NCBI GenBank assembly: GCA_038087875.1
Contig: CM075981.1
Coordinates: 2,542,001 to 2,606,000 of the forward strand
DNA: 64,000 bases
Source of the DNA: Malacoraja senta
Lineage: Eukaryota
Reading direction: 5' to 3'
The translations under genes and the position numbers were made by a program. The notes beneath the pieces are model-generated. The model saw nothing but the letters and a program-made list of their open reading frames with translations. It ran no database searches and was not told where the DNA came from. Below, piece by piece: positions 13,785 to 51,988 of this stretch; positions within the stretch are counted from its first letter, which is position 1; each line of letters begins with the position of its first letter.

Positions 13785-14005
13785 GTTAAACGTTAACGGC
13801 TGATGCAAGGACACGTTTGGCAGAGGGTGGAGAGGTCGCGGCTGACTCCGGCCAATGCTCCGTGGGAGCCAGTGATTGGTTGAAAGTACGTGAGCGCAGG
13901 CAATGAGGGTCAGGAGAAGCCGGGAGTAAGTATAAACGGAGCGAGCGATGGCAGGAGATGTGAACAAGACCGGCCCCGTCACCCTGTGTGGAGACTCCGG
14001 AGCTG
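13785..14005 (+). promoter_or_regulatory. V-domain gene copy 1 promoter and non-coding exon 1
   Basis: HNF1-like GTTAAACGTTAAC 13785-13797, ERSE 13861-13879, TATAAA 13931, donor CTG|GTAACC at 14006. Confidence 0.65.
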
Positions 14006-15116: not shown

Positions 15117-15690
15117 AACCTCCCACTGATTCAGCAGGGCCCGTCCCAGGGTCAGTAGCAAAGTCTAGTTTAGTTTAGTTTAGTTCAGAGGTACAGCAGG
15201 GAAACAAGCCCTTCGGCCCACAGAGCCAAAGGGGACCAGTGATCACCCATACACTAGTTCTATCCCACACACTGGGTACAATTTACACAGACCAATTAAC
15301 CAACAAACATGCACGTCACAGGGATGTGGGAGGAAACCGGAGCACTCGGCGGAAACCCACATGATCTCAGTGCGAACGTGCAAACTCCGTACAAACAGCA
15401 CTCGGGAAATAGAGAGGGTGAATACACAGAGTATTTTGCCCAGAGTGCGGGAATCAAGAACCAGGGGACATAAGTTTAATATGAGGGGCAAATTTTGAAA
15501 GGAACCTGAGGGGCAACTTTTTCACTCAGAGGGGGGGGGTGTATGGAACGAGCTGCCAGAGGAGGTAGTTGAGGCAGGTACTACAACGACATTTAATGGA
15601 CACTTGGATAGGAATGGTTTTATGGGGATATGGGCCAAATGTAACGAAATAGGACTACCTTAGATGGGGTATATGGGTCTTCATGGGCAA

Positions 15691-19849: not shown

Positions 19850-20070
19850 GTTAAACGTTAACGGCTGATGCAAGGACACGTTTGACAGAGGGTGGAGAGG
19901 TCGCGGCTGACTCCGGCCAATGCTCCGTGGGAGGCAGTGATTGGTTGAAAGTACGTGAGCGCAGGCAATGAGGGTCAGGAGAAGCCGGGAGTAGGTATAA
20001 AAGGAGCGAGCGATGGCAGGAGATGTGAACTATACCGGCCCCATCACCCTGTGTGGAGACTCCGGAGCTG
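19850..20070 (+). promoter_or_regulatory. V-domain gene copy 2 promoter and non-coding exon 1
   Basis: HNF1-like 19850-19862, ERSE 19926-19944, TATAAAA 19996-20002, donor at 20071, acceptor CACAG| at 20427. Confidence 0.7.
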
Positions 20071-20431
20071 GTAACCACTCCTGTGGATCCTTCAAGTGTC
20101 TGTGAGTGATGGGGTGGGATTGTCTCTGTTCACTGTTCCCCCAGTTCAGAAGCCTGATAGCAGAAGGGAAGAAGCTGTTCCTGAGTCTGGTGGTGTGAGC
20201 TTTCAAGCTTCTGTACCTTCTGCTAGACAGGACCAGGGAGAAGGAGGAATGACCGGGGTGGGACAAGTGATGGAGTCATAGAGTCATACAGCGAGACCTT
20301 CGGCCCAACTTGCCCACGCCCACCAAATGTCCTCTGGTTCTCGATTCCCCAACTCTGGGCGAGTTCAGGGAATGTCATCATGAATCCTACTGAGTTGCAA
20401 TAAGGTGACCCATTGTTTCACCCACAGGAAC

Positions 20432-20965
20432 ATGGGACTGCAGAGATGGATAGGATTCATGCTCCTTGTGGAGATGGTGTGGCAAGTCTCCGGAACTGGA
20501 ACAGGTCCGATCTCCAGAGAATGGGGAGAGGAAGCAAACTTGCCCGGGTGGAACGCACGGGCGTCTCGGCAAGTCAACGATAAACAGCTTCCAAGATGCA
20601 CGAACGAATCAGATTCTGATACATACAGACATCACCTATCATCGATTAACATGAAGGTGCTCGTTGCATCTCTGGGTGGTTCTATTACGCTGCCCTGTAA
20701 AGTATCCAAAGCTTACAATTATCCCCGGTTTGTTAAATGGAGTAAAGATGGTGTTGAAATTGCCTGGTTTCATGTTAGAATGCATGCCCAATATGAGGGA
20801 CCTGATGTCCGCTGGCAGTTCGTGCATGAAGAACCCTCTTATAAACGGGACGGCTCATTGCTCCTGACAAGCATAAAAGAGAAAGATGAGGGGACATATT
20901 CCTGTGTCTGGTCCACTGCTTGTCGTAGGGATTGTGAAGAATTGGCCCGGCTGACAATCCAGTGA
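20432..20965 (+). CDS. Secreted single V-set Ig-domain protein (177 aa, single coding exon), copy 2, intact
   Basis: Predicted signal peptide MGLQRWIGFMLLVEMVWQVSG, about 50-aa linker, V domain with SITLPC (B), VKW (C), DGSLLL (E), DEGTYSC (F); no TM segment. Confidence 0.85.
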   Translation: MGLQRWIGFMLLVEMVWQVSGTGTGPISREWGEEANLPGWNARASRQVNDKQLPRCTNESDSDTYRHHLSSINMKVLVASLGGSITLPCKVSKAYNYPRFVKWSKDGVEIAWFHVRMHAQYEGPDVRWQFVHEEPSYKRDGSLLLTSIKEKDEGTYSCVWSTACRRDCEELARLTIQ

Positions 20966-22131
20966 AACCTCCCACTGATTCAGCAGGGCCCGTCCCAGGG
21001 TCAGTAGCAAAGTCTAGTTTAGTTTAGTTCAGTTCAGAGGTACAGCAGGGAAACAAGCCCTTCGGCCCACAGAGCCAAAGGGGACCAGTGATCACCCCAT
21101 ACACTAGTTCCATCCCACGCACAGGGTACAATTTACACAGACCAATTAACCTACAAACATGCGCGTCTCTGGGATGTGGAAGGAAACCGGAGCACCCGGC
21201 GGAAACCCACACGATCACAGTGAGAACGTGCAAACTCCGTACAGACAGCACCCGGGAAATAGAGAGGGTGAATACACAGAGTATTTTGCCCAGAGTGCGG
21301 GAATCAAGAACCAGGGGACATAAGTTTAATGTGAGAGGGGCAAATTTTGAAAGGAACCTGAGGGGCAACTTTTTCACTCAGAGGGGGGGGGGGGGGGGTG
21401 GGTGTATGGAACAAGCTGCCAGAGGAGGTAGTTGAGGCAGGTACTACAACGACATTTAATGGACACTTGGATAGGTCGATGGATAGGAATGGTTTTATGG
21501 GGATATGGGCCAAATGTAACGAAATAGGACTACCTTAGATGGGGTATATGGGTCTGCATGGGCAATGTAGATTGGCTATTTCCTACTAGCCAATTATAGT
21601 GGTTGATAGTAGTGACTCCGCCTAATATGCGGTTTATATTATCAAGAGCTTGCCTACGCTAGTTAGTACGAGTAGCTGCTAGGAACTGTAATGTCCTGCA
21701 GATTTATGCTGCGAGTAGATTTAATAAACATGTGTTGTATCTTGATATGTGTTCGACTCAGCTCATTACAGGCGAGTTGGGCTGAAGGGCCTGTTTCCGT
21801 GCTGTATGACTCTATGACACTAAGTAGGGAATAGTAAAGGTATAAAGATGAGCAGCGTGGAAGGTGTGAGCGTGGATCGCATGCAGTAAGGAGAACTGAC
21901 CCTGCTTGCACCGGCAAATGTACGATTAATGGAAATAAACTCTTCTGCCTGCCCTGAAGACAGCCGGTGTGAGTGATTCTTTGTACGCCAGCTTTGAGTT
22001 GGGTGTGAACTTTGTGCAACTCTTGCTCACTACGGGCAACATCGCCGGGTTCTATGAGCTGTGTCCATTATTGGTCATGACCCCATGGTGACGGAACAAC
22101 ATGTGGAAAATCAGGAGTCTGCAGATGTTGA

Positions 22132-23498
22132 TACATAGATACATAGATACATAGAAATTAGGTGCAGGAGTAGGCCATTCAGCCCTTCGAGCCTGCACCG
22201 CCATTCAATACGATCATGGCTGATCATCCAACTCAGTATCCCGTACCTGCCTTCTCTCCATACCCCCTGATCCCTTTAGCCACAAGGGCCACATCTAATT
22301 CCCTCTTAAATATAGCCAATGAACTGGCCTCAACTACCCTCTGTGGCAGAGAGTTCCAGAGATTCACCACTCTCTGTGTGAAAAAGTTTTTCCTCATCTC
22401 GGTCTTAAAGGATTTTCCCCTTATCCTTAAGCTGTGACCCCTTGTCCTGGACTTCCCCAACATCGGGAACAATCTTCCTGCATCTAGCCTGTCCAACCCC
22501 ATAAGAATCTTGTACGTTTCTATAAGATCCCCTCTCAATCTCCTAAATTCTAGCGAGTATAAGCCAAGTCTATCCAGTCTTTCTTCATATGAAAGTCCTG
22601 ACATCCCAGGAATCAGTCTGGTGAACCTTCTCTGCACTCCCTCTATGGCTATAATGTCCTTCCTCAGATTTGGAGACCAAAACTGTACGCAATACTCCAG
22701 GTGTGGTCTCACCAAGACCCTGTACAACTGCAGTAGAACCTCACTGCTCCTATACTCAAATCCTCTTGCTATGAAGGCCAACATACCATTCGCTTTCTTC
22801 ACTGCCTGCTGCACCTGCATGCCTACTTTCAATGACTGGTGTACCATGACACCCAGGTCTCGCTGCATCTCCCCATTTCCTAATCGGCCACCATTTAGAT
22901 AATAGTCTGCCTTCCCGTTTTTGCTACCAAAGTGGATAACCTCACATTTATCCACATAATACTGCATCTGCCAAACATTTGCCCACTCACCCAGCCTATC
23001 CAAGTCACCTTGCAGTCTCCTAGCATCCTCCTCACAGCTAACACTGCCCCCCAGCTTAGTGTCATCCGCAAACTTGGAGATGTTGCTTTCAATTCCCTCG
23101 TCCAGATCATTAATATAAATTGTAAATAGCTGGGGTCCCAGCACTGAGCCTTGTGGTACCCCACTAGTCACTGCCTGCCATTGTGAAAAGGACCCGTTTA
23201 CTCCTACTCTTTGCTTCCTGTTTGCCAGCCAGTTCTCTATCCACATCAATACTGAACCCCCAATACCGTGTGATTTAAGTTTGTATCCTAATCTCTTATG
23301 TGGTACCTTGTCGAAAGCCTTCTGAAAGTCCAGATACAACACATCCACTGGTTCTCCCCTATCCACTCTACTAGTTACATCCTCGAAAAATTCTATAAGA
23401 TTCGTCAGACACGATTTACCTTTCGTAAATCCATGCTGACTTTGTCCAATGATTTCACCACTTTCCAAATGTGCTGCTATCCCATCTTTAATAACTGA
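22132..23498 (-). mobile_element. 5'-truncated CR1 LINE with an open RT C-terminal frame
   Basis: ORF 22233-23558 ([27 protein letters not shown]); (CTATGTAT)n tail; TTGA duplication; empty site in cassette 1. Confidence 0.93.
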
Positions 23499-25521
23499 TT
23501 GAGAACAGGAACAAAAGTAAAGGGGAATGTGGGAGACACACAGTGGGTCAGGCAGCATCTGTGGGGGAGCAACAGAGGCAACGTCTCAGAATGAAGATCC
23601 TTCAAGAGAACCGGGCAAGAGAGGATGTTTGTCGGTGAAGTTAGGTGAATCACATGGTCTCAGGTGTCAAGAGTCCAGAGTCAAGAGTGTTTAATTGTTG
23701 TATGTACCGACAATGGAACGATGAACTCGTTACCTGCAGCAGCAGAACAGGCTTGGAAACACCATACTCATTGATAACATTTAGTAAACGGGTGGTCACG
23801 GTGGCGCAGCGGTAGAGTTGCTGCCTTACAGTGCCGGAGACCTGAGTTCGATCCCCACTACGGGTCCTGTCTGTATGGAGTTTGTACGTTCTCCCAGTGA
23901 CCTGCGTGGGTTTTCTCCATGATCTTCTGTTTACTCCCCCACTCCAAAGACGCAGAGGTTTGTAGGTTAATTGGCTTGGTAAATGCTTTAATTGTTGAAG
24001 TACCTGCCTTAAATTGTCCCTAGTGGGTGTAGGATAGTGTTCATGTGTTGGGGATCTTATAGAAACATATCAAGTTATAAAAAGACTGGACAAGCTAGAT
24101 GCAGGAAAAATATTCCCAATGTGGAAAATTGGGGGAGTCCAGAGCAAGGGGCCACAGTCCAAGAAGAAAGGAAAGGCCATTTAAAACTGAGATGAGAAAA
24201 AAGGTTTTCATCCAGAGAGTTGTGAATTTGTGGAATTCTCTGCCACTGAAGACAGTAGAGGTCAATTTACTGGATGAATGTTAAAATTCTAGAGTTAGAT
24301 AGAGCTCTAGGGGGGAGCGGAATCAAGGGATAGGGGGAGAAGGCAGGCACAGGTTACTGATAGTGGATGAACAGCCATGATCACAATGAATGGCGATGCA
24401 GGTTTGAAGGGCCAAATGGCCTCCTCCTGCACCTATTCATTGGCTCCATGAAGCGCTGACTGCCCCCCCCCCACCACGTGGGAACGATTGATTGCGTTGG
24501 GGTAACGGGTTGCATTGGGGAAATGGGTGAGTGGTGGAATATTGCGTTGGGGAAACGAGGCCCAATGAGTCAGGAGGGTAGGGAGGGGAGAGGGGTTATG
24601 GAGGGTGGGAGGGACTGACTGAGGGTGGGGAGTGGCTGAGGGTAATGGAAAGGAGAGGGAGGGAGCAGTGAAGGAGGAGTGGAGGAGGGGAGGAGGTGAG
24701 GGGAGAGAAGAGGGATGGTGAGAGGAGGGGGAGGAAGTGTTGGGAATGAAGGGCAATGAGCCGCGTCTGCGCAGTTGGGGCTATGGGTGAGTGGTGGAAT
24801 ATTGCGTTGTTCGAATGGGCTACGTTTGGGGAATGGGTGATGGGAATGATTGGCTCCGCAGGGCGCCTATCTCTGGGGTGAACGCTGATGCTGCATTCTG
24901 GAACCAGCCACGACCCCCCCCCCCCCCCGTGTTGGGGGACGGGGCCCAACGGGTCCCTCGTGGTCTTGTATACTTATAAAAGTCTCGTCTTTGTTCTATG
25001 TGTGTATGTGTGATTGTATTTTCACCAAAACGGTACACAGTAGCACACAAATGTTTGCAGAACGCTACTCAGCTTTTTCCCGTCGTCAATGTAATGTTGC
25101 CATATTTCACAAGTTATTGATATTTAAAGTTTAAAAAAAGCTAACTTTGAGAATAATAACTGCCTTTGAGAGGGAGACTCTTCCAGCGATGTCACAATGG
25201 CATCCCACAGTTGTCCAATCACAATGGGATCTCAATTAAATAAGCTGCAGTGAACATTCCAAAAACTGAAAATGACTTAACAATGTGATCTCTGCTGTCA
25301 ATACACAAGATATGAGAGTGTTTTTACATTGTTGTAAGGAGAGGGACGCAGTGTGGGATATTTAAAAGTTTTAAAGTTACATTTAAAAGTTGGATTTCTT
25401 CAAATCTACACTGGCAGTTAGGCAATTATTACATCACAATGCCCTACCGGCTACAATGTTTCTATCCCAGAACACTGAGTCCTTCACAGCAAATGTCCTT
25501 CAGGGAATGTCGAGCTTCTGC

Positions 25522-28500
25522 TGTTGGAATAACTTAGATCCCATACAGTAATTAAGATCCAAAGACTTTATTAGCATTACAGCATAGGTAACTTCATCTT
25601 AATACATAACTCAAGACTGAGGGAGAAAAGGGCTGAGAAGCTTTATGTTAAACTAGTGGGCGTAGCTACAAAGTATGACTCATAACACGAGTGACACTGA
25701 TCTACATCCTCCCTCTTAAAAAAATTAAATGTCAGTACAAAACCATTGACTAAATAAGGCATGCATAGCAATTGATAATAAGCTGGAGGAAAGTCAAACA
25801 TAGCCCGGGTACTTCACGGTGTGCTTGCAAACACGACCAGCATGTGTGCGATTAAAACCTTCTCCAATTTCCCAACCGCGGACAGAGCCGGTGGCTGCAC
25901 GGGTGACGGAGATTGTAGCAGCATTCCCGGTGATGAAACAGGGGACTTCAGCACAGGCGGAGGGAGGGTCGTCGGCATTGGCAAAGCAGCCGCTCCAGAA
26001 GTGTGTTGTTGTGCTGGTGTAGGCGGATCGATGCCGCTGGACACAGATGGCAGTACACTTGTACGGTCTGGATAATACGGTGGCGGATTCGGCTCATTCA
26101 CAGGCAGGATATGTTGTCTGTTACGCCTGTAGGAGCCGCCATCGTCACTGACCAGATATGTGCGTGGCTCAGAAGCAGTTCCAGAAATTACACCGATACG
26201 GCCTTTGTCAGTTTGCAAAAGGACCACCTGCTCCTTGGTTAATGGTGGCAGTGGCCTACTTGTCTTGTCATACCACTGTTTTTGAATGTCACGCTTTTGT
26301 TGTAACCTGGACTGGACTTCCAATGGTGGTACCACTTGTGGGATCAATGCCTGATCCACCACTGGCACCGTGGCTCGGGTCAAATGTTGTGCGGGTGAAC
26401 CCAAAATGGGGCCGTGGGAGATGTTATGTTGGTTGAGCAGATCCAGGTTAACGTCGGAATTAGCTCTGTACGATCGTTCCATGAGCTGTTTGGCACTCTT
26501 GACAGCCCGCTCAGCCAGTCCATTCGACTGTGGATATTCAGGGCTGCTGGTGATGTGGCAAAAACCCCAGCGTGCAGCAAACTCCTTGAAGTGTTGGCTG
26601 GTAAATTGACTGCCGTTATCAGATAACAGTATGCACAGAGCTCCGTGGTCTGCATAATGGCGAGCAAGCTTCGAAACTACCCCGCGAGAAGTGGGGCTCC
26701 TAAGAAAATCAATGTCAAACCATCCAGAATACGAATCGACGAGTACCAGGTACTGCTTGCCATACCATTCAAATATGTCAGTTGCCACGGTAGACCACAG
26801 GAGGGCAGGAGCTGGATGTGAAAGAAGTGGTTGCTTTTGTTGATGAGGTGCCAAGCTGTTACACACTGCACAGGACGCCACATTCTCGGTGATGTATTCG
26901 GCCATGCCAGGCCAGTAAAACATGTTTCTTGCCCGTAGGACGGTGGCTACAGTCCCTGGGTGTCCTGCATGTACAGCGTCGAAATACTTGCTGTGTAGCG
27001 AGGCATTGACCACAGCCTTGTGTCCTTTTCCAATAATGTCATCCTGCAGTACTAGCTCATCGCGCACGGCAAAGAAAGGCCGAACTGACAGCAGAACGTT
27101 GTAGTGTTTGTCTGGCCAGCCGCGCTTAATGACGGAGGCGAGCGACCATAAGGTACTGTCAGCAGCAGTGTGGGCAACCAAATCCTCCATACAGGACGAG
27201 GGAATAAAAGACACAGTCATTACGATAAAGTCATCATCTGGCGAGGGCAGACCCTCACAGATCTTCCGGGGTGCACGCGAGAGAGTGTCAGCCAGGTGCA
27301 TATCCTTACCACGTTTGTAGGAGAGGCTTGAATCGGTTTGTTAAAGATGCTGATCAGAGGTTGGTGGTCGGTTTCAATCGTGACCGTATGTCCAAAGATA
27401 AAGTCGTTAAATTTCTTGCAGGCGAAAACAGCCGCCAGTAGCTCTTTCTCAATTTGGACATATCGTTGTTCTGTGTCAGTCAGTGCGCGAGGCATTGGCA
27501 ACAGGCTTATTGCCGCTACCGTCATTTTGAAGACATGCTGCGCCCAGTCCGTGTTGTGAAGAGTCACGTCAATGTGACCCGGTTGTTTAGGATCAAAGTA
27601 AGCGAGAGTAGGAGCACAAGACATCTGCTGCTTAAGAGTGTTGAACGCTCTCTGCTCTTGCTCGTGCCAGGTCCAAGCAGTGTCTTTGTGTGTAAGCTGT
27701 TGCAATGGGGCTGATATTTCACTGAAGTCTGGAATAAATTTGCTCAAGTAGTTCACCATGCCAAGGAATCTTTGTAGACTGAGCACGTGTGTGGGTGCTG
27801 GGAGCTCGTTGATGGCACTGGTTTTTGCCGGATCAGTTTTTAGGCCGTCCTTAGTGAACATATGCCTTTCACCTCACTTACCCTGAATTTGCATTTTTTA
27901 GGGTTTTGCTTGAGGTTGATGGCCTTGGCGCGATCCAGGACCTTTGTCAGATTAGCATCGTGTTCTTCGACAGTTCGTCCCGCAATGAGGATGTCATCCA
28001 CTACAATGGAGCATGGGTAACCCGCAAACAACTGCTCCATAGCTTGTTGAAATACTTCACTGGCAGAGCTTATGCCAAAAGGCATGCGAAGAAATCTGTA
28101 TTGCCTGAACGGTATGCTGAAGGTGGTTAACTTGGAGGAGTTGTTTTCCAGCGAAATGCCAGAATGAACTCTTGGCATCTAGTACAGTGAATACAGTTGC
28201 TTCAGCCATCTGCGCTGCAATCTTGTCCACAATGCGCATGGGATAGTGAGGTCAATTAATGGCTGTGTTTTCAAGTCCTTAGGTTTGATACAAATCCATA
28301 TTTCGTCTTTATTCTTCTTCGTTGCCATAACCATGGTGGAGACCCAATCCGAGGGGTCAGCGACGGGAGCAATCACACCTAGAGACACCATTCTGTTGAG
28401 TTCACTTTGAACATGGTCCGGCATAGCATGGGGAATCTTGTGTGCTGTACGGACAACTGGGATTATCTCAGCGTCAATGGTAATTGTGTACTTAACAGGC

Positions 28501-32281: not shown

Positions 32282-32801
32282 TCACTCCATTAACAGCCAG
32301 GTCTCTACTTCACAATTCCCTCTTTTCTCAGAGGTCCAAACGCAGGAATATATCGCTTCATCGTCCTCTTGTGTCCGTGTCAGGAGCAACGAGGCGTCCC
32401 GATGCCAGTGGACGTTTTGATGCACGAACTTCCAATGGACATCAAACCCTTGATAATGTGCAAAGGTACGATATCTGGCAATGGAAACACCATCTTTAAT
32501 CCACGAAACAGAGCTCACTTCACCGTATCTGCGGATACTTTACAGTACAGCGTTACAGAACCACCCGGAGATGCAATGATCACATTATATCTAATAATGC
32601 CAGGCTGATCGCTGTCAGAACCTGGCTTGTCAATGCATTCTGGAAGCCGATCTTCATTGACTGGCCGAGGCTCCCGTGCGTTCCACCGGGGCAAGTTGCT
32701 TCCTCTCCCCATTCCCTGGAGATCAGACCTGTTCCAGTTCCGGAGACCTTGCCACACCATCTCCACAAGACCATGAATCCTGTCCATCTCTGCAGTCCCA
32801 T
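32282..32801 (-). pseudogene. Secreted single V-set Ig-domain gene, copy 3 (inverted, four 1-nt indels)
   Basis: Pieces in ORFs 32580-32828, 32515-32820 and 32282-32518; SVTLYC, VSW, DASLLL, DEAIYSC. Confidence 0.8.
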
Positions 32802-33278
32802 GTTCCTGTGGGTGAAACAATGGGTCACCTTATTGCAACTCAGTAGGATTCATGATGACATTCTCTGAAGCTGCTGCCACCACACTGGCAATGTCGCTGT
32901 GCAGCTTCTTCAGTTCCCGCCTGGTTTATTTTAAGTTGCTTTGACCTGTCATGGACCAATAACATTAAAGTGGCAGCCAAGGTGGCACACCAATGCATCT
33001 ACTTCCCCGGAGATCGAGGAAATATTGCAAGTCTCCAATGTCTCTTAGAATCTTCTACAGATGCACCATGGAGAGCAGACTGTGGGGTTGCATCACAACT
33101 AGGTTTGGGAACAGCTCTGAGCCCAAGACCACAAGAAATTGCAGAGAGTTGTGGATGGAGCCCAGTCCATCACACAGAACACACTCCCCACCAGTGACTC
33201 CATCTACAACCTAAAAAATCAAAGACTTGTCCCACCCCGGTCATTCCTCCTTCTCCCTGGTCCTGTCTAGCAGAAGGT

Positions 33279-34358
33279 GGCAGGCAGAAGGTGGCGGGCA
33301 GTGACTAGTGGGGTACCACAAGGCTCAGTGCTGGGACCCCAGCTATTTACAATATATATTAATGATTTGGACGAGGGAATTGAATGCAACATCTCCAAGT
33401 TTGCGGATGACACGAAGCTGGGGGGCAGTGTTAGCTGTGAGGAGGATGCTAGGAGGCTGCAAGGTGACGGATAGGCTGGGTGAGTGGGCAAAAGCATGGC
33501 AGATGCAGTATAATGTGGATAAATGTGAGGTTATCCACTTTGGTGGCAAAAACAGGAAAGTAGACTATTATCTAAATGGTGGCCGATTAGGAAAAGGGGA
33601 GATGCAACGAGACCTGGGTATCATGGTACACCAGTCATTGAAAGTAGGCATGCAGGTGCAGCAGGCAGTGAAGAAAGTAGGCATGCAGGTGCAGCAGGCA
33701 GTGAAGAAGTATGTTAGCATTCATAGCAAAAGGATTTGAGTATAGGAGCAGGGAGGTTCTACTGCAGTTGTACATGGTCTTGGTGAGACCACACCTGGAG
33801 TATTGCGTACAGTTTTGGTCTCCAAATCTGAGGAAAGACATTCTTGCCATAGAGGGAGCACAGAGAAGGTTCATCAGACTGATTCCTGGGATGTCAGGAC
33901 TTTCATATGAAGAAAGACTGGATAGACTCGGCTTGTACTCGCTAGAATTTAGAAGATTGAGGGGGGATCTTATAGAAACTTACAAAATTCTTAAGGGGTT
34001 GGACAGGCTAGATACAGGGAGATTGTTCCCGATGTTGGGGAAGTCCAGGACAAGGGGTCACAGTTTAAGGATAAAGGGGAAATCCTTTAGGACCGAGATG
34101 AAAAAAACATTTTTCACACAGAGAGTGGTGAATCTCTGGAACTCTCTGCCACAGAAGGTAGTTGAGGCCAGTTCATTGGCTATATTTAAGAGGGAGTTAG
34201 ATGTGGCCCTTGTGGCTAAAGGGATCAGGGGGTATGGAGAGAAGGCAGGTACAGGATACTGAGTTGGATGATCAGCCATGATCATATTGAATGGCGGTAC
34301 AGTCTCGAAGGGCCGAATGGCCTACTCCTGCACATATTTTCTATGTTTCTATGTTTCT
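33279..34358 (+). mobile_element. 5'-truncated CR1 LINE inside intron 1 of V-gene copy 3
   Basis: RT peptides, (CTATGTTT)n tail, AAGGT duplication at 33274-33278 / 34359-34363. Confidence 0.9.
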
Positions 34359-34509
34359 AAGGTACAGAAGCTTGAAAGCGCGCACCACCAGACTCAGGAA
34401 CAGCTTCTTCCCCTCATGCTATCAGGCTTCTGAACTGGGGGAACAGTGAACAGAGACAATCCCACCCCCATCACTCACAGACACTTGAAGGATCCACAGG
34501 GGTGGTTAC

Positions 34510-34729
34510 CAGCTCCAGAGTCTCCACACAGGGTGTCGGGGCCGGTCTTGTTCATATCTCCTGCCATCGCTCGCTCCTTTTATACCTACTCCCGGCTTCT
34601 CCTGACCCTCATTTCCTGCGTCACGTACTTTCAACCAATCATTGCCTCCCACGGAGCATTGGCCGGAGTCAGCCGCGACCTCTCCACCCTCTGCCAAACG
34701 TGTCCTTGCATCAGCCGTTAACGTTTAAC
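34510..34729 (-). promoter_or_regulatory. V-domain gene copy 3 promoter and non-coding exon 1
   Basis: TATAAAA 34578-34584, CCAAT-N9-CCACG 34635-34653, HNF1-like 34717-34729, donor at 34509. Confidence 0.65.
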
Positions 34730-39855: not shown

Positions 39856-40094
39856 CTAAGACCAGCTGCAACATTTACAGGATGAATCAAAGACTAATCC
39901 TGTGGCACAGTCCTTCAGGAAGGCCTGTCCACCAGCACACACGTAGAGCTTGCTCTTGTCCTTTGGATCGGGGTAGTTACCATCCGCTTTGCCCTTACAG
40001 AAATCACTGTCTCCACCGCCACTGTCTCCACCACCACTAGGAGCATCAGTAGGTGGGACCGTCGGCTTCAATGTTGTCTTGGATGGGACGCAAG
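39856..40094 (-). pseudogene. Chitinase B exon 11 (CBM14 intact)
   Basis: FCKGKADGNYPDPKDKSKLYVCAGGQAFLKDCATGLVFDSSCKCCSWS*. Confidence 0.9.
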
Positions 40095-40649
40095 CTGCAA
40101 AGAAACACAGTTCGTTATAAGTTCATCAGTTCTCCTCAATTCATAGGAGAATTAGGCGATTTGGCCAATTGACTTTTCCACTATTCAATCATGGTTGGTC
40201 TATCACTCCCTCTCAACCCCATTCTCCTGCCTTCTCCCCATACACTCTGACACCCGAACTAATCTTGAATCTGTCAATCTCTGGCTTAGAAATACCCATT
40301 GACTTGGCCTCCACATCCGTCTTAGTTCATGTAGAAACAAGGAACCGCAGATGCAGGTCTACAAAGTGTGAATATCCCAGTCAATGGGATTATCCCACTG
40401 AACTCCCCCTCTCACCAACTCCAGAGAGGTCCTGACCTCCCATCTACCCCAGATGCTGGTCTATAAAAAGAGACACAATGTGCTGGAGTAACTCAGTTGC
40501 TTGTTCCCTATGCCCACCACGCTCTGTGTGGAAAACGTTGCTATCATACCTAGTCCTACCACTATCTGCCTCCACCACCACCCCCGGTAACGTGTTCCAG
40601 GCACCCACCACCCTCTGTGTGAAAGACTTGTCCCGCACATCTCCATTAC

Positions 40650-40788
40650 CTCCAGAGATGCCAAGGCCAGAGTGCAGAGTCTTGATGAGAGGGTAGGGTC
40701 CCTGGTGACAGAAGGCACCAGAGAAGTCATCCAGAGCCAGATCCCAGACCATAGCTCCTCCAAAGTTGTTGTTCTTCAGCCACTCAAC
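40650..40788 (-). pseudogene. Chitinase B exon 10
   Basis: VEWLKNNNFGGAMVWDLALDD...; AG/GT. Confidence 0.9.
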
Positions 40789-41049
40789 CTGGAAGACACA
40801 GTTCACATCTTTACACCAGCATCCCTCAGTCGATAATGGCTTCTACGATGCGCCGTAGAAAGCTTTTTATCGGGATTCATCACAGCACAGCATAAAGAAC
40901 TTGTTTGAGCTGCATAACGAAGCATGATCATCCCTTAAACATCCAAGCGAAGGCACAGATCTAAGGCAAACGTAACTTTATTATTTTACAAAATTGGAAT
41001 ATTAATATATGTTCATGAGTGATAGCATTAGGCCATTCTGCCCATTGAA

Positions 41050-43290
41050 ACATAGAAAATAGGTGCAGGAGGAGGCCATTCAGCCCTTCGAGCCAGCACC
41101 GCTATTCATTGTGATCATGGCTGATCGTCCCCAATCAATAACCCGTGCCTGCCTTCTCCCCATATCCCTTGATTCCACTAGCCCCTAGAGCTCTATCTAA
41201 CTCTCTCTTAAATCCATCCAATGACTTAGCCTCCACTGCCCTCTGTGGCAGGGAATGCCACAAATTCACAACTTTCTGGGTGAAAACGTTTTTTCTCACC
41301 TCAGTCTTTAATGGCTTCCCCTTTATTCTAAGACTGTGTCCCCTGGTTCTGGACTCGCCCAATATTGGGAACATTTTTCCTGCATCTAGCTTGTCCAGTC
41401 CTTTTATAATTTTATATGTTTCTATAAGATTCCCCCTCATCCTTCTAAACTCTAGTGAATACAAGCCTAGTCTTTTCAATCTTTCCTCATATGACAGTCC
41501 CGCCATCCCAGGGATCAATCTCGTGAACCTACGCTACACTGCCTCAATCACAAGGATGTCCTTCCTCAAATTAGGAGACCAAAACTGTACACAATATTCC
41601 AGATGTGGTCTTACCAGAGCAATATACAACTGCAGAAGAACCTCTTTACTCCTATACTGAAATCCTCTTGTTATGAAGGCCAACATTCCATTAGCTTTCT
41701 TTACTGCCTGCTGTACCTGTAAGCCAACTTTCAGTGACCGGTGTACAAGGACGCCCAGGTCTCGCTGCACCCCCCCCTTACCTAACCTAACCCCATTGAG
41801 ATAATAATCTGCCCCCTTGTTTTTGTCGCCAAAGTGAATAACCTCACATTTATCTATATTATACTGCATCTGCCACTGTGGAATTCTCTCCCTCAGAGGG
41901 CAGTGGAGGCAGGTTCACTGGATGCTTTCAAGAGAGAGCTAGATAAGGCTCTTAAAAATAGCGGAGTCAGGGGATATGGGGAGAAGGCAGGGACAGGGTA
42001 CTGATTGGGGATGATCAGCCATGATCACATTGAATGGCGGTGCTGGCTCGAAGGGCCAAATGGCCTACTCCTGCACCTATTGTCTATTGTCTATTGCATC
42101 TGCCCACTCACTCAACCTGTCCAGGTCACCCTGCAACCTCCTAACATCCTCTTCACAGTTCACACTGCCACCCAGCTTTGTGTCATCCGCAAACTTGCTA
42201 GTGTTGCTCCTAATTCCCTCTTCCAAATCATTGATATATATGGTAAACAGTTGCGGCCCCAACACCGAGCCTTGCGGCACTCCACTCGCCACTGCCTGCC
42301 ATTCTGAAAAGGACCCGTTCACTCCTACTCTTTGCTTCCTGTCTGCCAACCAATTTTCTATCCATGTCAACACCCTACCCCCTAGACCATGTGCTCTAAT
42401 TTTAGTCACCAGTCTCCCGTGCGGGACCTTATCAAAGGCTTTCTGAAAGTCTAGATGCACTACATCCACTGGTACCCCTTCATCCATTTTACTTGGTACA
42501 TCCTCAAAAAATTCCAATGATTAGTCAAGCATGATTTCCCTTTCATAAATCCATCATAAATCTTGGACTAATCCTTTTACTGCTATCCAAATGCCCCATT
42601 ATTACCTCTTTAATAATTGACTCCAGCATCTTTCCCACCACCGGTCAGGCAAACTGGTCTGTAATTCCCTGTTTTCTCTCTCGCCCCTTTCTTGAAAAGT
42701 GGGATAACATTAGCTATCCTCCAATTCACAGGAACTGATCCTGAATCTATTGAACATTGCAAAATGATCACCAATGCGTCCACTATTTCTAGAGCCACCT
42801 CCCTGAGGACCCTGGGATGCAGACCATCAAGCCCAGGGGATTTATCATCCTTCAGTCCCATTAGCCTACCCAATACTATTTCTTGCCTAATGAAAATTTA
42901 TTTCAGTTCCTCTACCCCCTTAGATCCTCTGTCCTCCAGTACATCTGGGACATTGTTTGTGTCTTCCTGAGTGATGACAGATCCGAAGTACCTGTTCAAC
43001 TCTTCTGCCATTTCCTTGTTACCCATAATAATTTCATCCATGTCTGCCTTCAAGGGACCCACATTTGACTTTTTTACTCTTTTTCCCTTAACATATCTAA
43101 AGAAGCTTTTACTGTCCTTCTTTATATTCCTGGCCAGCGTACTTCATATTTTCAGCCCGTATTGCCCGTTTTGTTTCCTTCTGTTGTCCTATGAAAGTTT
43201 CCCAATCCTCTGGCTTCCGGCTACTCTTTGCTGTGTTATACATCTTTAAAAAAAGTTTTATTCTATCCCTAACTTCAAGTCTACTCCGCC
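41050..43290 (-). mobile_element. CR1 LINE fragment with a nested opposite-strand CR1 3' end (41875-42095)
   Basis: RT peptides in ORFs 41135-41518, 41534-41869, 42077-42517; GCATCTGCC duplicated at 41866 and 42096; absent from copy A intron 9. Confidence 0.88.
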
Positions 43291-43533
43291 ATTCACTAAT
43301 GGCTGATCTATCTCTACCTCCTAACCCCATTCTGCTACCTTCTCCCCTGACACCCGAACACCATGAATTTATGGTGAGCTGGAAATATTTTGCAGAATGT
43401 AACGACAAAAGATTCTAAAGATTTTGAAGCATGATTCTGGAGCTCACTGTTGGAAACTCTGCAGTAGATATTGAGATAAACGAGACCACGATGGTTCACG
43501 TGGAAAGGGTAGAACTTCTATGGTCAGATGTAC

Positions 43534-43650
43534 CTTGCCTCCAAAGCTCTTGACGTTGTCATAGCCGACCCATATTTTGTCCTTGAAGGCGTACGGGGTA
43601 TCTTGTGGGGCGTTCTATTTCTGTGTGGTACCTTTCAGGAACCCGCAGAT
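43534..43650 (-). pseudogene. Chitinase B exon 9 with premature stop
   Basis: ICGFLKGTTQK*NAPQDTPYAFKDKIWVGYDNVKSFGGK. Confidence 0.9.
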
Positions 43651-44218
43651 CTGTCCAGAGACGGAGATCTTAAGGACCAATCTTGTCGAGGTGGAAACAA
43701 ATCATGAGAGGAACCGATCAGGTAGATGCAATGTGTCTCTTGCCCAGGGTCGGGGAATCGAGAACCAGAGGACATAAGGTGAGGGAGAAAGATTTAATAG
43801 GAATGGTGCTGGCTTGAAGGGCCGAATGGTCTACTCCTTCACCTATAGTCTATTGAACCTGTGGGGAAACCATTTGACGAGGGTGGTGGGTGGAGATAGT
43901 GACAAAGGCTGGAGAGGAACAGGAGACAAAATAGTGTCAGATGCTGAGAGGAGAGGAGCAGAGAGATGTAGAGAGATGTGCAAAGAGAGGAGGAAAGAGG
44001 AGAGAGACGTGAAAAGGGAGAAACATGAAAGAGGAGAGGAGAGAACGATATATAAAGAGAGAACGGAGAATGTGGGTGGGTGATGTTTCGGGTGGAGATC
44101 CTTCCTCAGGCTCCAGCACCTTGTGTCCATGTATGTTGTGTGTGGTTATTCAGTATTGGATTGGAAGATAGCATTGAGTAAAGGGCCACGCGGTTGGATT
44201 GGTCGGTAGGTACAGTAC

Positions 44219-44401
44219 CTCATAGTAGGCCAGGAAGCTGGCTTGGCGGGTGTATTTGCCGGCTGGTCCGCCGCCTCCTGCTGGGGCACCCACGGCCGTG
44301 CTGGGCGATGTCAGTCTGAAGGTACGTCCGTAGGTGGGGAAGCCCACATTCAACTTCTCCACTGGAGCCCCCTTGCTCTTCCAGTAGTTCATGGCGTATT
44401 C
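44219..44401 (-). pseudogene. Chitinase B exon 8
   Basis: EYAMNYWKSKGAPVEKLNVGFPTYGRTF...SFLAYYE. Confidence 0.9.
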
Positions 44402-45051
44402 CTGCAGGGAGACAGTTGGCATCAAAGGACTTTCGGCTCATTTTTAACTTTAGGTTTATTATTGTCACGTGTACCGAGGCACAGTGAAAAGCTTCCAAAC
44501 AGATCAGATAATACCGTACGTAAATACAATCAAATCAAACTCAGGTACAATAGGTGGAGCAAAGGGGAAGATACAGAGTACAGAATATAGTTCTCAGCAT
44601 CGTAGCGCATCAGTTCCAGAGACAAAGTCCAACGTCCGCAATGGGGTAGAGGTAAATCAGACAGTACCCTAGCTTATAGAACAACTGTTCAGAAGCCTGA
44701 TAGCAAAGGGGAAGGAGCTGTTCCTGAGTCTGGTGGTGCGTGCTTTCAAGCTTCTGTACCTGCTGCTAGACAGGACCAGGGAGAACGAGAAATGACCGGG
44801 GTGGGACAAGCTTTGATTCTGTTGGCTGCTTTTCTGCATGAAGTCTAGATGAAGTGTAGATGGAGTCAATGGTGGGGAGTGCGGTCTGTGTGATGTCTTG
44901 GGCTCAGAGCTGGTCCCAAACCTAGTTGCAACCCCACAGTCTGCTCTCCGTGGCGTATGGAACAGTTATATGGACTTGGCGAAATGGGTTTATTAATTCG
45001 GAGAGAGGAAATGAAAAAGTTGAGCAGGATTTAGTTTTCTTGAGCACTTAC

Positions 45052-45178
45052 CACATTGAAGTAGATGTTGGCATAAACCTTGTCATTAGGCAGGGGATAG
45101 AGGGGGCTGTTCTCTCCAGTAACGTGGCTCCAGGGACCATAGAAATTGTAGGACATCACGTTGAAGAAGTCAATTACC
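45052..45178 (-). pseudogene. Chitinase B exon 7 (D213N)
   Basis: VIDFFNVMSYNFYGPWSHVTGENSPLY. Confidence 0.9.
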
Positions 45179-46534
45179 CTGCAAGAGAGGAGACCGGGGT
45201 CACCCTGATACTCCACGCACCAAATTAACATCAGAACGCAGAACAGTACAACACGTGAACAGGCCCTTCTGCCCACAATGTCCGTGCAAAACATGACGGC
45301 AAGATAAACTCATCTCCTCTGTCTGCACGTGATCCATATCCCTCCATTCCCTGCATATCCACGCGCCTATCCACAAGCCTCTTAAACACCACTATCGTAT
45401 CTGCCTCCACCACCACCCCTAGTAGCTAGTAGCTTGTTCCAGGCATCCACCACCCTCTCTGTAAAAAAAACCCATGCACATCTCCTTTAAACTTGAACAT
45501 GATGCCAAATCCATCACTTATCTACCTGCACATCACCAACATCCCTCCATGCCCGGCATGATCATGGGCCTATCTAAAGGTCTTTGAAATGCCATTTACG
45601 AATCTGTAGGAGCCATTCATGCTTAGGCTAGTTACTGTTAGCATATTTCATTATATTGTCTAGATATTTCTTGCAGAATTATGTTGTACACTAGGGGGTC
45701 GGCTTTTGATACGTAGATGGGCGAGACATACATCGGATTAGGCAAGCGAAACCACAGGGAGTGGCCAGATCGACAGGAGCGGGCAGAAGTAATATTGTTT
45801 TTTACCACTTCTGATAGTAAGAACAGAAAGCTAAAATTTGTATTAGAATAAAGTGGATCTGGTATGTTCACTTCGTTGTTATTACAACAACTTCAATAAC
45901 AAATTAATTAAACTGGAAATAACGACTGGAAGATTCGTTTTTGTTATCGACTGCGTAAAGTCGGTCACTCCTCCCTGCCTGTGCAGTAATGACAATGGAA
46001 AGGGTTGAAATTGCTATTACAGTATCTGCTTCAACCACCACCCCAACCCCAGCAGGGTCTGACTGTCTACCCTATCTATGCCTCTAGTGATTTTATAAAC
46101 TTCTTTCAAGTCTCTCCTCAACCTCTGATGTTCCAGAGGAAACAATGCAAGTTTGTCCAACCTCTCCCTGTAGCTAATCCCCTCTAATCCAGGCAGCGCT
46201 CTGGTAAATCACCTCTGCACCGTCTCCAAAGACTCCACATGCTTCCTGTAATGGAGACGACCAGACCTGCATGCAATGCTCTAAATGCCTCCTGGCTAAA
46301 GACCTACAGAGCTGCAAGTTGGCTTCCTGACTCTCACACTCAATGCCCCGACCAATGAAGGCATTGAATGCATTAGGGTTGTGGATGGATCTCAATCATC
46401 GTGCTGGAAGCTCCCACCAATGAAATTGTGGAGCCATGAAAAACTAGTTCAAATACGACGTCAAACTCGCTAAACTCCCGAGATGAAAGCCCACAGGAAA
46501 AGTTGGGTTTTTTTGCGTGTGGAAGGACACTCAC

Positions 46535-46659
46535 TTGCCGAGCTGAGGAATCTCGTAGCCAGCATCGATGTAATTCTTCCCACCAGCAACGGCAGCAGAC
46601 AGTAGCAGTCGTGGCTTTCCTGCGCTTTTCCCTTCGGCCTCGAAGGCAGCCATCAGCTC
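46535..46659 (-). pseudogene. Chitinase B exon 6
   Basis: ELMAAFEAEGKSAGKPRLLLSAAVAGGKNYIDAGYEIPQLG. Confidence 0.9.
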
Positions 46660-47310
46660 CTGTGGGTCAGAGAGATCGAGGGCTCCTTTAGCAAGAGGTC
46701 AAGTCTAGTCTTAGAAGGGCTTTTTCCCCAGAGATGCTGCCTGACCCGCTGAGTTACTCCGACACTTTGTGTCAATTTCAAGTTTAGTTTAGTTTAGTCT
46801 GGTTTGGACATGCAGCGTGGAAACAGGCCCTTCGGCCCATAGAGTCCACGCTGACCAGCGATCACCCATTCATACTAGTTCTGTCCTACAGACTAGGGAC
46901 AATTTACTGAAGCCAATTAACCTACAAACCCGCACGTCTTTAGAGTGTGTGAGGAAACCAGAGCACCCAAAGTCACGGTGTGTATGTACAAACTCCGTAC
47001 AGACAGCATCCGTGGTCAGGATCGAACCCGCGTCTCTGGCGCTGTGGGGCAGCAACTCTACTGCTGTGCCACCGTGTCAACCAAGAGCGGGGAAGAAACC
47101 TTTTAATCCCCACTCAAAATGGTGCTTGGTTCAAATTTTATTAAATTCTTAAATTCCTTTGTGTAATCTGAAAATCTGTCCTTGGTGATCTTGACAATAA
47201 GGTTACATTTATTGGATAAATTTGCAAGTCATAGAGCTATGCAGCGTGGAAACAGCCACTTTGGCCCAATCTGCCCACACCGACCAATATGTCCCATCTA
47301 CACTAGTCCC

Positions 47311-47620
47311 ACAAAGTGCTGGAGTAACTCAGCCGGTCAGGCAGCATCTCTGGAGACCATGGAAAGGTGACTTTTCAGAGTGCTGGAGTAACTCAGCGGG
47401 TCAGGCAGCATCTGTGGAGATCATGGATAGTTGACGTTTCACAGAGTGCTGGAGTAACTCAGCGGGTCAGGCAGCATCTGTGGAGAACATGGATAGGTGA
47501 TGTTTCAAAGAGTGCTGGAGTAACTCAGCGGGTCAGGCAGCATCTCTGGAGAACATGGATAGGTGATGTTTCAAAGAGTGCTGGAGTAACTCAGCGGGTC
47601 AGGCAGCATCTCTGGAGATA
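47311..47620. repeat. Five tandem units of about 65 nt from a Penelope-like tail (two units at the homologous site in A, 6685-6795)
   Basis: AGTGCTGGAGTAACTCAGCGGGTCAGGCAGCATCT repeats; similar array at 56490-56730. Confidence 0.8.
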
Positions 47621-47680
47621 AAGGATAGGTTTGGCCCATTTATTTTAACGAAACCTATAGTTAGATGTACTTGACCGCAC

Positions 47681-47846
47681 CTGAGCCAGGACAGTGTAGA
47701 GATGCTTGTCAATGTGAGGACTTCCTCGTGATCCAGGATATTGCCAGTTGATGTCCAGACCATGAAAGCCGTACTTTCTCAGGAAGGGAATAACTGACTT
47801 GATAAAGATTTTCCGAGTTCCTGATGAGGCGACCATTGCGATGAGT
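47681..47846 (-). pseudogene. Chitinase B exon 5 (HxxDxNxQ, 47741-47764)
   Basis: LIAMVASSGTRKIFIKSVIPFLRKYGFHGLDINWQYPGSRGSPHIDKHLYTVLAQ. Confidence 0.92.
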
Positions 47847-48347
47847 CTGCAGGAGGGATGAATGTGGGGAGAGGAGTTAGAAATGAAATGTGCCGGAGAC
47901 ACAAGGAACTGTAGTAACGGCCGCTGTACTCAGTGACACAGTGACTCTGCTGTTGTATCCTATCATGTACAGATCACCCAAGCCTTCGTTAAACACTCGT
48001 GGTTAAAAGTTACTCCTTTTTCCTGCTATCATCCGAAGTTTCATGTGAAATTATTCTTTCTGAAAGTTATGTTTAGTTTAGTTTAGAGATACAGCGCAGA
48101 AACGGGCCCTTCAGCCCACCCAGTATGCACCGACTAGCGATCCCCACACTCTAACACTATCCTACACACAAGGGACAATTTACATTTACATTTACAATTA
48201 ACCTACAAATTTGTACGTCTTTGGAGTGTGGGAGGAAACCGAAGATCTCTGAGAAAACCCAGGTCACGGGGAGAACGTACAAACTCCGTACAGACAGCAC
48301 CCGTAGTCAGGATCAAACCTGGGTATCTGGTGCTGTGAGCGCTGTTA

Positions 48348-51931: not shown

Positions 51932-51988
51932 TTCTGTTTGCTAAAGTTCCAGCCTCCAATGGACAGCAGAGTCTTGAGGTTTGAATTC
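51932..51988 (-). pseudogene. Chitinase B exon 4
   Basis: NSNLKTLLSIGGWNFSKQ. Confidence 0.9.

What the first reader, a model, noticed from the sequence alone, without database searches (positions are those of the whole stretch)
20432..20965. Unplaced family of secreted, TM-less single V-domain proteins (three copies)
Seen: TATA, a non-coding exon, a 357-nt intron and one coding exon giving signal peptide + about 50-aa linker + one complete V-set domain (B-Cys, C-Trp, DxGxYxC, its own G strand) ending in a stop. There is no TM, constant domain or RSS. Paralogues lie at 14583-15116 and 32282-32801. Known V-domain innate families (CD300/pIgR-like, skate MDIR, teleost NITR/DICP) usually split leader and V into separate exons and are mostly membrane-bound. 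An intronless leader-linker-V is not a layout I recognise. Inference: a soluble germline-encoded recognition protein.
Basis: partly seen in the sequence, partly recalled or inferred. Interest (0 to 1): 0.88.

Follow-up and report, generated by a model that had tools for sequence, protein, structure and literature searches.

The report
Secreted nectin-type single-V gene family
This skate gene encodes a small, probably secreted protein made of one nectin/poliovirus-receptor-type immunoglobulin V domain; it belongs to an unstudied, fast-diversifying family found so far only in skates and an electric ray, and two of the three copies in this window are broken.

Summary
The ORF at 20432-20965 is real and intact. 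It encodes 177 aa: a leader, a roughly 50-aa linker and one complete V-set domain with its own G strand. It has no TM segment, no RSS and no further exon.

Four details of the observation need correcting.
- Copy A carries an in-frame TGA, and copy C has many frameshifts.
- A spliced cDNA contig from a Leucoraja-like paralogue places the intron at 20102-20427. That is 326 nt, not 357.
- The same cDNA starts upstream of the 'TATA', which therefore lies inside the 5' leader.
- Exon 1 carries an AUG that is in frame in this copy, so 'non-coding exon' is likely but not shown.

The family can be placed. Its profile and its electric-ray member match poliovirus-receptor/nectin D1 best. The ray member keeps the AX6G 'lock' and T(Y/F)P 'key' motifs, and copy B has lost both. 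Only automatic models exist, in Leucoraja, Rhinoraja and Narcine, and no paper was found.

Non-synonymous change exceeds synonymous change in the CDR-like loops: 22:0 for A versus B, and a count ratio of 2.2 over 12 genes.

My best reading is a soluble binding or decoy protein that diversifies on the nectin-type binding face. The function is untested.

The scan had already reported this family from an overlapping window (s1-140068), with the same conclusion.

The parts
19926..19944 (-). CCAAT-N9-CCACG (ER-stress-element consensus) just upstream of the mapped 5' end of copy B
   Evidence: exactly 3 matches in the window, one before each copy, against 0.08 expected by chance. The three belong to one duplicated unit, so they are not independent.
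19963..20101 (+). Exon 1 (5' leader) of copy B. It contains a short uORF (ATG 19968), the TATAAAA at 19997 and an in-frame AUG at 20013.
   Evidence: cDNA L004 positions 23-162 align to window 19963-20102 at 93%. L004 begins with a template-switch oligo. The sequence itself was read.
20102..20427 (+). Intron, GTGAGT...CACAG, 326 nt
   Evidence: L004 joins 20101/20102 to 20428. The Leucoraja models read ...KCLN|MGLQ across the same joint. The acceptor plus ATG context is conserved in Narcine.
20432..20494 (+). Predicted signal peptide, aa 1-21, with cleavage inferred after V-S-G
   Evidence: The best 11-residue hydropathy, 2.03, falls at residues 6-16. The cleavage site is my inference from the -3/-1 rule; no predictor was run.
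20495..20647 (+). Linker or possible propeptide, aa 22-72. It contains R43-x-x-R46, P-R-Q-V, C56 and one N-x-S site.
   Evidence: AlphaFold pLDDT is below 50 throughout, except at C56. P-R-Q-V followed by Cys at +10 is conserved in Narcine, but the R-x-x-R is not.
20648..20965 (+). V-set domain, aa 73-177, plus the stop codon
13898..15116 (+). Copy A: exon 1 with a 2-nt deletion, an intron, and a coding exon at 14583-15116 with TGA at 14964-14966. A pseudogene or a null allele.
   Evidence: A 204-nt contig in runs X1 and X2 holds the TGA stretch without any difference.
32282..34613 (-). Copy C: exon 1 at 34613-34478, an enlarged intron, and a coding exon at 32805-32282 with multiple frameshifts and a stop. 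A pseudogene.
39857..48170 (-). Neighbouring chitinase (GH18 + CBM14 type) gene. A second one lies at 2085-7361.
   Evidence: Both stretches are collinear at 82-96% identity with the Leucoraja gene whose product hits PF00704 and PF01607. A GH18 C-terminal fragment scores weakly in Pfam.

Best explanation
Copy B (19963-20965) is the one intact member in this window of a batoid gene family. Each gene has a 5' leader exon and a single coding exon. The product is a leader, a roughly 50-residue flexible N-terminal segment tied to the domain by an extra disulfide (C56-C168, inferred), and one poliovirus-receptor/nectin-type V domain. After signal-peptide cleavage the protein is most likely released as a soluble molecule of about 15-17 kDa. 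It may be trimmed further after the conserved P-R.

The family grows and decays by tandem duplication between chitinase genes. The 5' cassette, from promoter to pro-region, is kept nearly uniform across copies. The V domain changes fast, mostly at the BC, C'C'', DE and FG loops. Those loops include the positions of the nectin-family AX6G lock and T(Y/F)P key.

I infer that it works as a soluble binding protein whose nectin-type binding face is under diversifying selection. The likeliest role is a humoral or mucosal recognition or decoy factor against fast-changing partners such as microbes or viral attachment proteins.

Shown: the gene structure, the domain type, transcription of a paralogue, and the pattern of substitutions. 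Inferred: secretion, processing, the disulfide, the ligand class and the tissue.
For: - The ORF is intact and the V domain is confident.
- There is no TM segment and no RSS.
- Homologues were found only in Leucoraja, Rhinoraja and Narcine. All have the same architecture and the same four conserved Cys.
- The best structural matches are nectin-1/-4 and PVR D1.
- The family profile against PDB sequences has PVR D1 on top, E 3e-13.
- For the Narcine member alone, the top 21 PDB hits are all PVR or nectins. Its A-x6-G and T-Y-P align to PVR's A-x6-G and T-F-P. The lock-and-key role of those motifs is described in PMC10486284.
- cDNA L004 is spliced, has a stop codon and at least 219 nt of 3'UTR.
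- A versus B over the V domain gives 35.5 non-synonymous to 1.5 synonymous changes, dN/dS 7.6, Fisher p 0.003.
- In the top loops A versus B gives 22:0.
- A count on a tree of 12 genes gives 2.16 for top loops, 0.83 for strands and 0.82 for bottom loops.
- The interleaving with chitinase genes is conserved in Leucoraja.
Against: - There is no expression evidence for this copy or this species. No RNA run was listed, and the runs that hold the sequence look like genomic DNA.
- Only one RNA contig of the whole family was found in the protein collection.
- Half or more of the copies are pseudogenes, and dN/dS over strands is about 0.8, so constraint is weak overall.
- No single codon reaches significance.
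- Patchy gene conversion between paralogues could mimic part of the A/B signal.
- Copy B alone matches PVR only weakly, E about 1e-3, and it lacks both the lock and the key.
- An in-frame upstream AUG could add 31 residues ahead of the leader.
- No ligand, tissue or secretion data exist.
Confidence: 0.55

Rival explanations
1. It is a soluble ligand or antagonist of the animal's own nectin/PVR-family receptors, acting in cell adhesion, immune-checkpoint-like signalling or reproduction. Fast change would then come from sexual or intragenomic conflict rather than from pathogens.
For: The domain is PVR/nectin-type. The Narcine member and the 171-aa skate subgroup keep the AX6G lock, and Narcine also keeps the TYP key that mediates binding within that family.
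Against: Copy B and its subgroup have lost both lock and key. The number of paralogues and pseudogenes and the excess of loop changes fit an external arms race better than a fixed self-ligand. No tissue data exist.
Confidence: 0.2
2. It is a decaying lineage-specific duplicate array with little or no function. The intact ORF of copy B has survived by chance, and the high dN/dS reflects relaxed constraint plus gene conversion.
For: Two of three copies here are broken. Whole-domain dN/dS is about 1, and strands give about 0.8. Only one RNA contig was found for the whole family.
Against: The architecture, four Cys, core Trp/Tyr/Asp/Leu and the P-R-Q-V-x7-C segment are kept between skates and an electric ray. 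Intact copies exist in every species seen. Top loops exceed neutrality at 2.16 (about 21 synonymous changes against about 41 expected, by my estimate). A versus B gives 22:0 in top loops. Relaxation alone does not produce either result.
Confidence: 0.12
3. Translation starts at the upstream in-frame AUG (20013). The product would be 208 aa, with the hydrophobic stretch lying internally and acting as an uncleaved anchor or not at all, so the protein would not be a free secreted V domain.
For: The cDNA contains that AUG in a good context. NCBI models in Leucoraja use it. It is in frame in copies B and C.
Against: - The extension is out of frame in copy A and in all Rhinoraja copies seen, where it ends as a 20-codon uORF.
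- It is replaced by unrelated sequence in Narcine.
- All 6 codon differences between window B and Leucoraja are non-synonymous (read).
- The hydrophobic core is only about 12-14 residues and contains a Glu, which is too short for a membrane span.
- A short uORF precedes the AUG.
Confidence: 0.1
4. The ORF is one exon of a larger gene and is spliced on to constant-domain or TM exons elsewhere.
For: None was found. The idea is considered only because V exons usually belong to multi-exon genes.
Against: The in-frame stop follows the G strand directly in all copies and species. There is no GT donor at the domain's end. cDNA L004 runs from the stop into 3'UTR. The gene models in three species end there.
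Confidence: 0.03

Closest known systems
Poliovirus receptor / nectin family first (V) domains: CD155, nectin-1 to -4, TIGIT, CD226, CD96
   Same: It has the V-set fold. These are the best structural matches and the best sequence-profile matches. The Narcine member keeps the AX6G lock and the T(Y/F)P key at the aligned positions.
   Different: - It is a single domain with no C2 domains, TM segment or tail.
- Leader and V domain sit in one exon.
- It has an extra Cys pair (C56-C168) and a roughly 50-aa N-terminal segment.
- Lock and key are lost in the window's subgroup.
- It forms a tandem multigene array with many pseudogenes.
- It has been seen only in batoids.
VCBPs of amphioxus and Ciona (secreted V-region chitin-binding proteins)
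   Same: Both are secreted, germline-encoded, highly diversified V-domain proteins. Here the V genes lie among genes that carry chitin-binding modules.
   Different: VCBPs have two V domains fused to a chitin-binding domain in one chain. Here the V protein has no such domain. No specific sequence or fold match to VCBP appeared among the top hits. The comparison rests on my own knowledge, and homology was not tested.
Fish innate V-type multigene families: teleost NITR, DICP and SITR, and skate MDIR
   Same: They are non-rearranging V domains in clustered families that duplicate fast. Carp SITR is likewise soluble (PMC3031540, seen; abstract only).
   Different: Those families are mostly membrane receptors with separate leader exons, and often have two Ig domains and signalling tails. 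None came up as a relative in any search here.
Gene families with a conserved prepro region and a hypervariable mature part (conotoxins, frog skin peptides); an analogy in evolutionary mode only
   Same: The cassette from promoter to pro-region is nearly uniform, with about 6 times fewer changes per codon than the mature domain. The mature part diversifies.
   Different: The mature part here is a folded Ig domain, not a short peptide. Propeptide cleavage has not been shown.

Membership tests
Immunoglobulin superfamily, V-set domain | Canonical B-strand and F-strand Cys, C-strand Trp, and the D-x-G-x-Y-x-C motif | tested here: met
   C89, W103 and D152...C158 are present. Of these landmarks C89, W103, D152, Y156 and C158 are invariant across the 9 aligned members; the Gly of the motif (G154) is not invariant. 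Pfam V-set scores 34.1 bits against a cut-off of 26.
Immunoglobulin superfamily, V-set domain | Nine-strand sandwich with C' and C'' strands | tested here: met
   AlphaFold models strands at 74-77, 85-87, 98-105, 108-114, 118-121, 128-130, 143-145, 154-164 and 166-176, with pLDDT about 80-91. The top Foldseek hits are V domains, with TM up to 0.77 by target.
PVR/nectin-like family | Closest relatives by sequence and by fold are PVR/nectin D1 | tested here: met
   The family profile puts PVR D1 first, E 3e-13. Narcine alone gives PVR or nectins for its top 21 hits. Foldseek ranks nectin-1/-4 and PVR first. Copy B alone is weak, E about 1e-3, behind JAML and a nanobody.
PVR/nectin-like family | AX6G 'lock' motif in C'-C'' | tested here: not met
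   Copy B has A111-x6-H118 and copy A has A-x6-A. The motif is met in Narcine and in three of the four aligned proteins of the 171-aa skate subgroup; P0006 lacks the Ala. The motif's role is taken from PMC10486284.
PVR/nectin-like family | T(Y/F)P 'key' motif in the FG loop | tested here: not met
   Copy B has T-A-C and copy A has T-F-S. Narcine has T-Y-P, aligned to PVR's T-F-P.
PVR/nectin-like family | V-C2-C2 ectodomain (or V alone) with a TM segment and a cytoplasmic tail | tested here: not met
   The stop codon comes right after the G strand and there is no hydrophobic span. The cDNA ends in 3'UTR.
Rearranging antigen-receptor V genes | RSS heptamer/nonamer at the 3' end, with the G strand supplied by a J segment | tested here: not met
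   No CACAGTG or CACTGTG lies within 20861-21100. The G strand is encoded in line with the rest of the domain.
VCBP | Two V domains plus a C-terminal chitin-binding domain in one polypeptide | tested here: not met
   The protein is one V domain with no other Pfam domain. The CBM14 belongs to the separate neighbouring chitinase gene.
Secreted preproprotein | Cleavable signal peptide and a conserved convertase site | tested here: inconclusive
   A leader-like hydrophobic core and a V-S-G site are present. R-x-x-R is present in copy B and most skate members but absent in P0003 and Narcine, whereas P-R-Q-V is kept. No predictor or experiment was available.

The most novel reading that the evidence does not exclude
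Batoids may have evolved a humoral, germline-diversified recognition or decoy system from the nectin/poliovirus-receptor V domain. In this reading the soluble single-V proteins are made next to, and perhaps together with, chitinases in gut or barrier tissue. Their former lock-and-key face is reshaped by an arms race, for example as decoys for viral proteins that use nectin-type receptors or as opsonins. That would be a vertebrate counterpart, in function, of the VCBPs of invertebrate chordates.
Probability: 0.22. Interest if true: 0.75.

Novelty: new variant of a known kind. Interest (0 to 1): 0.55.

Why it matters
Cartilaginous fishes are the oldest lineage with antibody-based immunity, and their non-rearranging V-domain families bear on how V domains were put to use for recognition. 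This family would be a soluble, tandemly expanding offshoot of the nectin/PVR branch, with excess amino-acid change at the classical binding loops. That would be a new example of germline-encoded humoral diversity. It would also offer a compact natural scaffold: about 105 residues, one domain and an extra disulfide. The family is annotated only as 'uncharacterized' or 'nectin-1-like', and no paper on it was found. Tissue expression, secretion and binding partners can all be tested directly in the little skate, which is a laboratory species.

Tried and rejected
- RNA evidence for this copy. The first run search gave six runs of unknown kind. Their contigs cover promoter, intron and exons evenly and show no splice joint, so I treat them as genomic DNA. 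A second search restricted to RNA-Seq libraries listed none.
- Exact look-up of the 177-aa protein. It is not in the collection.
- Tissue of SRR13269314. The accession is not in any searchable paper. A Leucoraja Smart-seq2 study of embryonic pharyngeal arches (PMC8476176, PRJNA686126) has a matching library type, but its supplements do not list the run. The link is unverified.
- Wider relatives. The profile search of 1.8 billion representatives mostly returned multi-Ig proteins that score by summing domains, such as lungfish 15-V proteins. Only P0001 and the Narcine protein matched full length. A length-restricted search with the alignment added nothing beyond skates and Narcine. Sharks and chimaeras were not found, but divergent single-domain hits could fall below the listed range.
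- The ESM Atlas gave only generic V-set clusters.
- The TATA box as core promoter is rejected for the observed transcript.
- Furin-type R-x-x-R as a family feature is rejected, because it is not conserved in Narcine or P0003.
- Per-site tests of selection had too few sequences. No site was significant.

Full report
**What is in the sequence.** The window holds an uninterrupted ORF at 20432-20965 on the + strand, encoding 177 aa.
- Pfam finds only generic Ig models over residues 74-163: Ig_3 at 7.7e-9, V-set at 3.4e-8 and ig at 6e-8.
- An AlphaFold model built on the family alignment gives a confident nine-strand domain at 73-177, with block pLDDT about 80-91. It has C' and C'' strands and its own G strand at 166-176. 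Residues 1-71 are unstructured except around C56.
- The best 19-residue hydropathy is 1.27, so no TM span is likely.
- No RSS heptamer lies near the 3' end.
- The stop codon follows the G strand with no GT donor.
- The leader-like N-terminus has a basic n-region, a hydrophobic core of about 12 residues and V-S-G. Cleavage after G21 is my inference, because no signal-peptide predictor was available.

**The other two copies are broken.**
- Copy A (coding exon 14583-15116) has TGA at 14964-14966 where copy B has Trp128. A 204-nt contig in each of two DNA runs holds that stretch with no difference, so this is not an assembly slip. Those runs may, however, come from the assembled animal. Copy A also lacks 2 nt in exon 1.
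- Copy C (minus strand, 32805-32282, with its exon 1 at 34613-34478 behind an enlarged intron) has several frameshifts and a stop.
- The window therefore holds one gene and two pseudogenes.

**Gene structure, corrected.** The protein collection holds a 202-aa family member, P0160, on a 900-nt Logan contig of run SRR13269314.
- That contig, L004, starts with the tail of a Smart-seq-type template-switch oligo. It then runs collinear with the genome through exon 1 and jumps straight to the coding exon. It continues through the stop into at least 219 nt of 3'UTR.
- Against the window, L004 23-162 aligns to 19963-20102 and 162-311 aligns to 20428-20577.
- The intron is therefore 20102-20427, with a GTGAGT donor and a CACAG acceptor, 326 nt. 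The Leucoraja gene models read ...KCLN|MGLQ across the same joint.
- The cDNA's 5' end lies about 34 nt upstream of the TATAAAA. For this transcript the 'TATA' is part of the leader. The genome just upstream of that end is not G-rich, so a strand-invasion artefact is unlikely. That last point is my reasoning.
- L004 comes from a paralogue of the other subgroup in a Leucoraja-like skate. It is 86% identical to P0005. It shows that the family is transcribed and spliced this way, not that copy B is.

**Is exon 1 non-coding?** It carries a short uORF and then an AUG at 20013. In copy B, copy C and Leucoraja this AUG is in frame with the main ORF and would add 31 residues.
- Against its use: it is out of frame in copy A.
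- It is also out of frame in every Rhinoraja copy seen, where a 1-nt insertion turns it into a 20-codon uORF.
- Narcine's modelled exon 1 is unrelated in sequence.
- All six codon differences between window B and Leucoraja are non-synonymous.
- What is conserved from skates to the electric ray is the acceptor followed at once by ATG and a leader.
- I therefore take 20432 as the start. This is likely but not shown.

**Relatives.**
- A search of 5.8 billion proteins found seven relatives, all automatic models: six Leucoraja erinacea 'uncharacterized' proteins and one from Rhinoraja longicauda, at 48-66% identity.
- A profile search of 1.8 billion representatives added one full-length match, 'nectin-1-like' XP_069798310 of the electric ray Narcine bancroftii. 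The other high scorers were multi-Ig proteins that score by summing domains.
- A length-restricted profile search found nothing more.
- All members share four Cys (56, 89, 158, 168), W103, W160 and a P-R-Q-V segment with Cys ten residues after the Arg.
- The R-x-x-R noted elsewhere in the scan is absent from Narcine and P0003. It is not a family feature.

**Placing the domain.**
- Foldseek ranks nectin-1, nectin-4, PVR, nectin-2 and TIGIT-complex V domains first, at E about 1e-8 and target TM about 0.7.
- The family profile against all PDB sequences puts PVR D1 first at 3e-13. JAML, CD226 and nectin-2 follow.
- For the Narcine protein alone, the top 21 PDB hits are all PVR or nectins. The alignment sets its A-T-S-A-P-H-R-G on PVR's A-V-F-H-Q-T-Q-G, and its T-Y-P on PVR's T-F-P.
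- These are the AX6G lock and T(Y/F)P key through which this family's V domains bind one another (PMC10486284).
- Three of the four aligned proteins of the 171-aa skate subgroup keep the lock; P0006 lacks the Ala.
- Copy B has lost both motifs, and copy A keeps T-F-S.
- Copy B alone matches PVR only at about 1e-3. The placement therefore rests on the family, not on this copy.

**Evolutionary pattern.**
- Copies A and B are 93-96% identical in the flanks.
- In the V domain they differ by 35.5 non-synonymous and 1.5 synonymous changes, giving dN/dS 7.6 and Fisher p 0.003. The prepro region gives 0.75.
- Using loop and strand boundaries taken from the model, the top loops (BC, C'C'', DE, FG) hold 22 non-synonymous and 0 synonymous changes.
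- Across 15 pairs of six genes, top loops exceed 1 in 14 pairs. For the 13 between-lineage (divergent) pairs, strands give 0.4-1.0.
- A parsimony count on a tree of 12 coding sequences gives 2.16 for top loops (185:21), 0.83 for strands, 0.82 for bottom loops and 0.79 for the prepro region. The prepro region has about six times fewer changes per codon.
- No single site is significant.
- Five of the eight lock positions and four FG-loop positions differ between A and B.
- Gene conversion from other paralogues could contribute. Conversion tracts should, however, carry about 20% synonymous differences, and that is not seen.

**Context.**
- Window 2085-7361 and 39857-48170 are collinear with a Leucoraja gene whose product carries GH18 and CBM14.
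- In Leucoraja the V genes are likewise interleaved with chitinase genes over about 90 kb.
- Retroelement ORFs lie between copies B and C.

**Interpretation.** The evidence supports a real, lineage-restricted family of small, probably secreted nectin/PVR-type V-domain proteins that diversify on the classical binding face.
- The most likely role is soluble recognition or decoy.
- Binding to the animal's own nectin-type receptors is the main rival.
- Neutral decay is less likely, given conservation of the core from skates to an electric ray and the loop-specific excess.
- No expression, secretion or ligand data exist for this copy.

**Earlier work in this scan.** The scan reported this family before, from an overlapping window (s1-140068). 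My independent tests reach the same placement. They add the cDNA-based corrections to the gene structure, the lock/key comparison and the partitioned selection tests.

Noticed in passing
window 13861-13879, 19926-19944, 34635-34653: The ER-stress-element consensus CCAAT-N9-CCACG occurs exactly three times in 64 kb, against 0.08 expected. Each match is antisense and about 20-37 nt upstream of the mapped 5' end of a V-gene copy. All three belong to one duplicated unit, so they are not independent.
   Followed up: partly
window 19968-20015; L004 28-75: A short uORF of 8-10 codons ends in or just before the 'TATAA', a few nucleotides ahead of the in-frame AUG at 20013. This layout could favour bypass of that AUG and initiation at 20432.
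   Followed up: no
L003 235-375 and 8919-9059 (minus) against exon 2 at 1308 and 9997 (plus): In Rhinoraja, two copies have the promoter/exon-1 cassette inverted about 940 nt upstream of their coding exon. Two other copies in the same locus have it in the normal orientation.
   Followed up: no
window 2085-7361 and 39857-48170 (minus); further pieces at 6124-12319 and 46531-53820: Chitinase (GH18 + CBM14 type) genes and fragments flank and interleave the V genes, as they do in Leucoraja. The microsynteny is conserved.
   Followed up: partly
window 22233-23558 (-) and 25814-27861 (-): A LINE-type reverse-transcriptase ORF and LTR-retroelement RNase H/integrase ORFs lie between copies B and C.
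   Followed up: partly
window 20921-20923 (Cys164 of copy B): Copy B has a fifth, unpaired Cys in the FG loop, at the position of the former 'key' motif. Copy A has Ser there. This could allow covalent dimers.
   Followed up: no
window 20049-20069 (exon 1): The in-frame exon-1 peptide contains C-G-D-S-G-A-G, which resembles the serine-protease active-site motif G-D-S-G-G. This was seen by eye only and may be chance.
   Followed up: no
window 21254-21359, 15404-15507; L004 795-900: A repeat-derived segment lies at a similar distance downstream of the stop in the window copies and inside the 3'UTR of the cDNA. The first AATAAA is 650-760 nt after the stop in the window copies.
   Followed up: no
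window 335-804: A run of N (assembly gap or masked stretch). It was left untouched.
   Followed up: no
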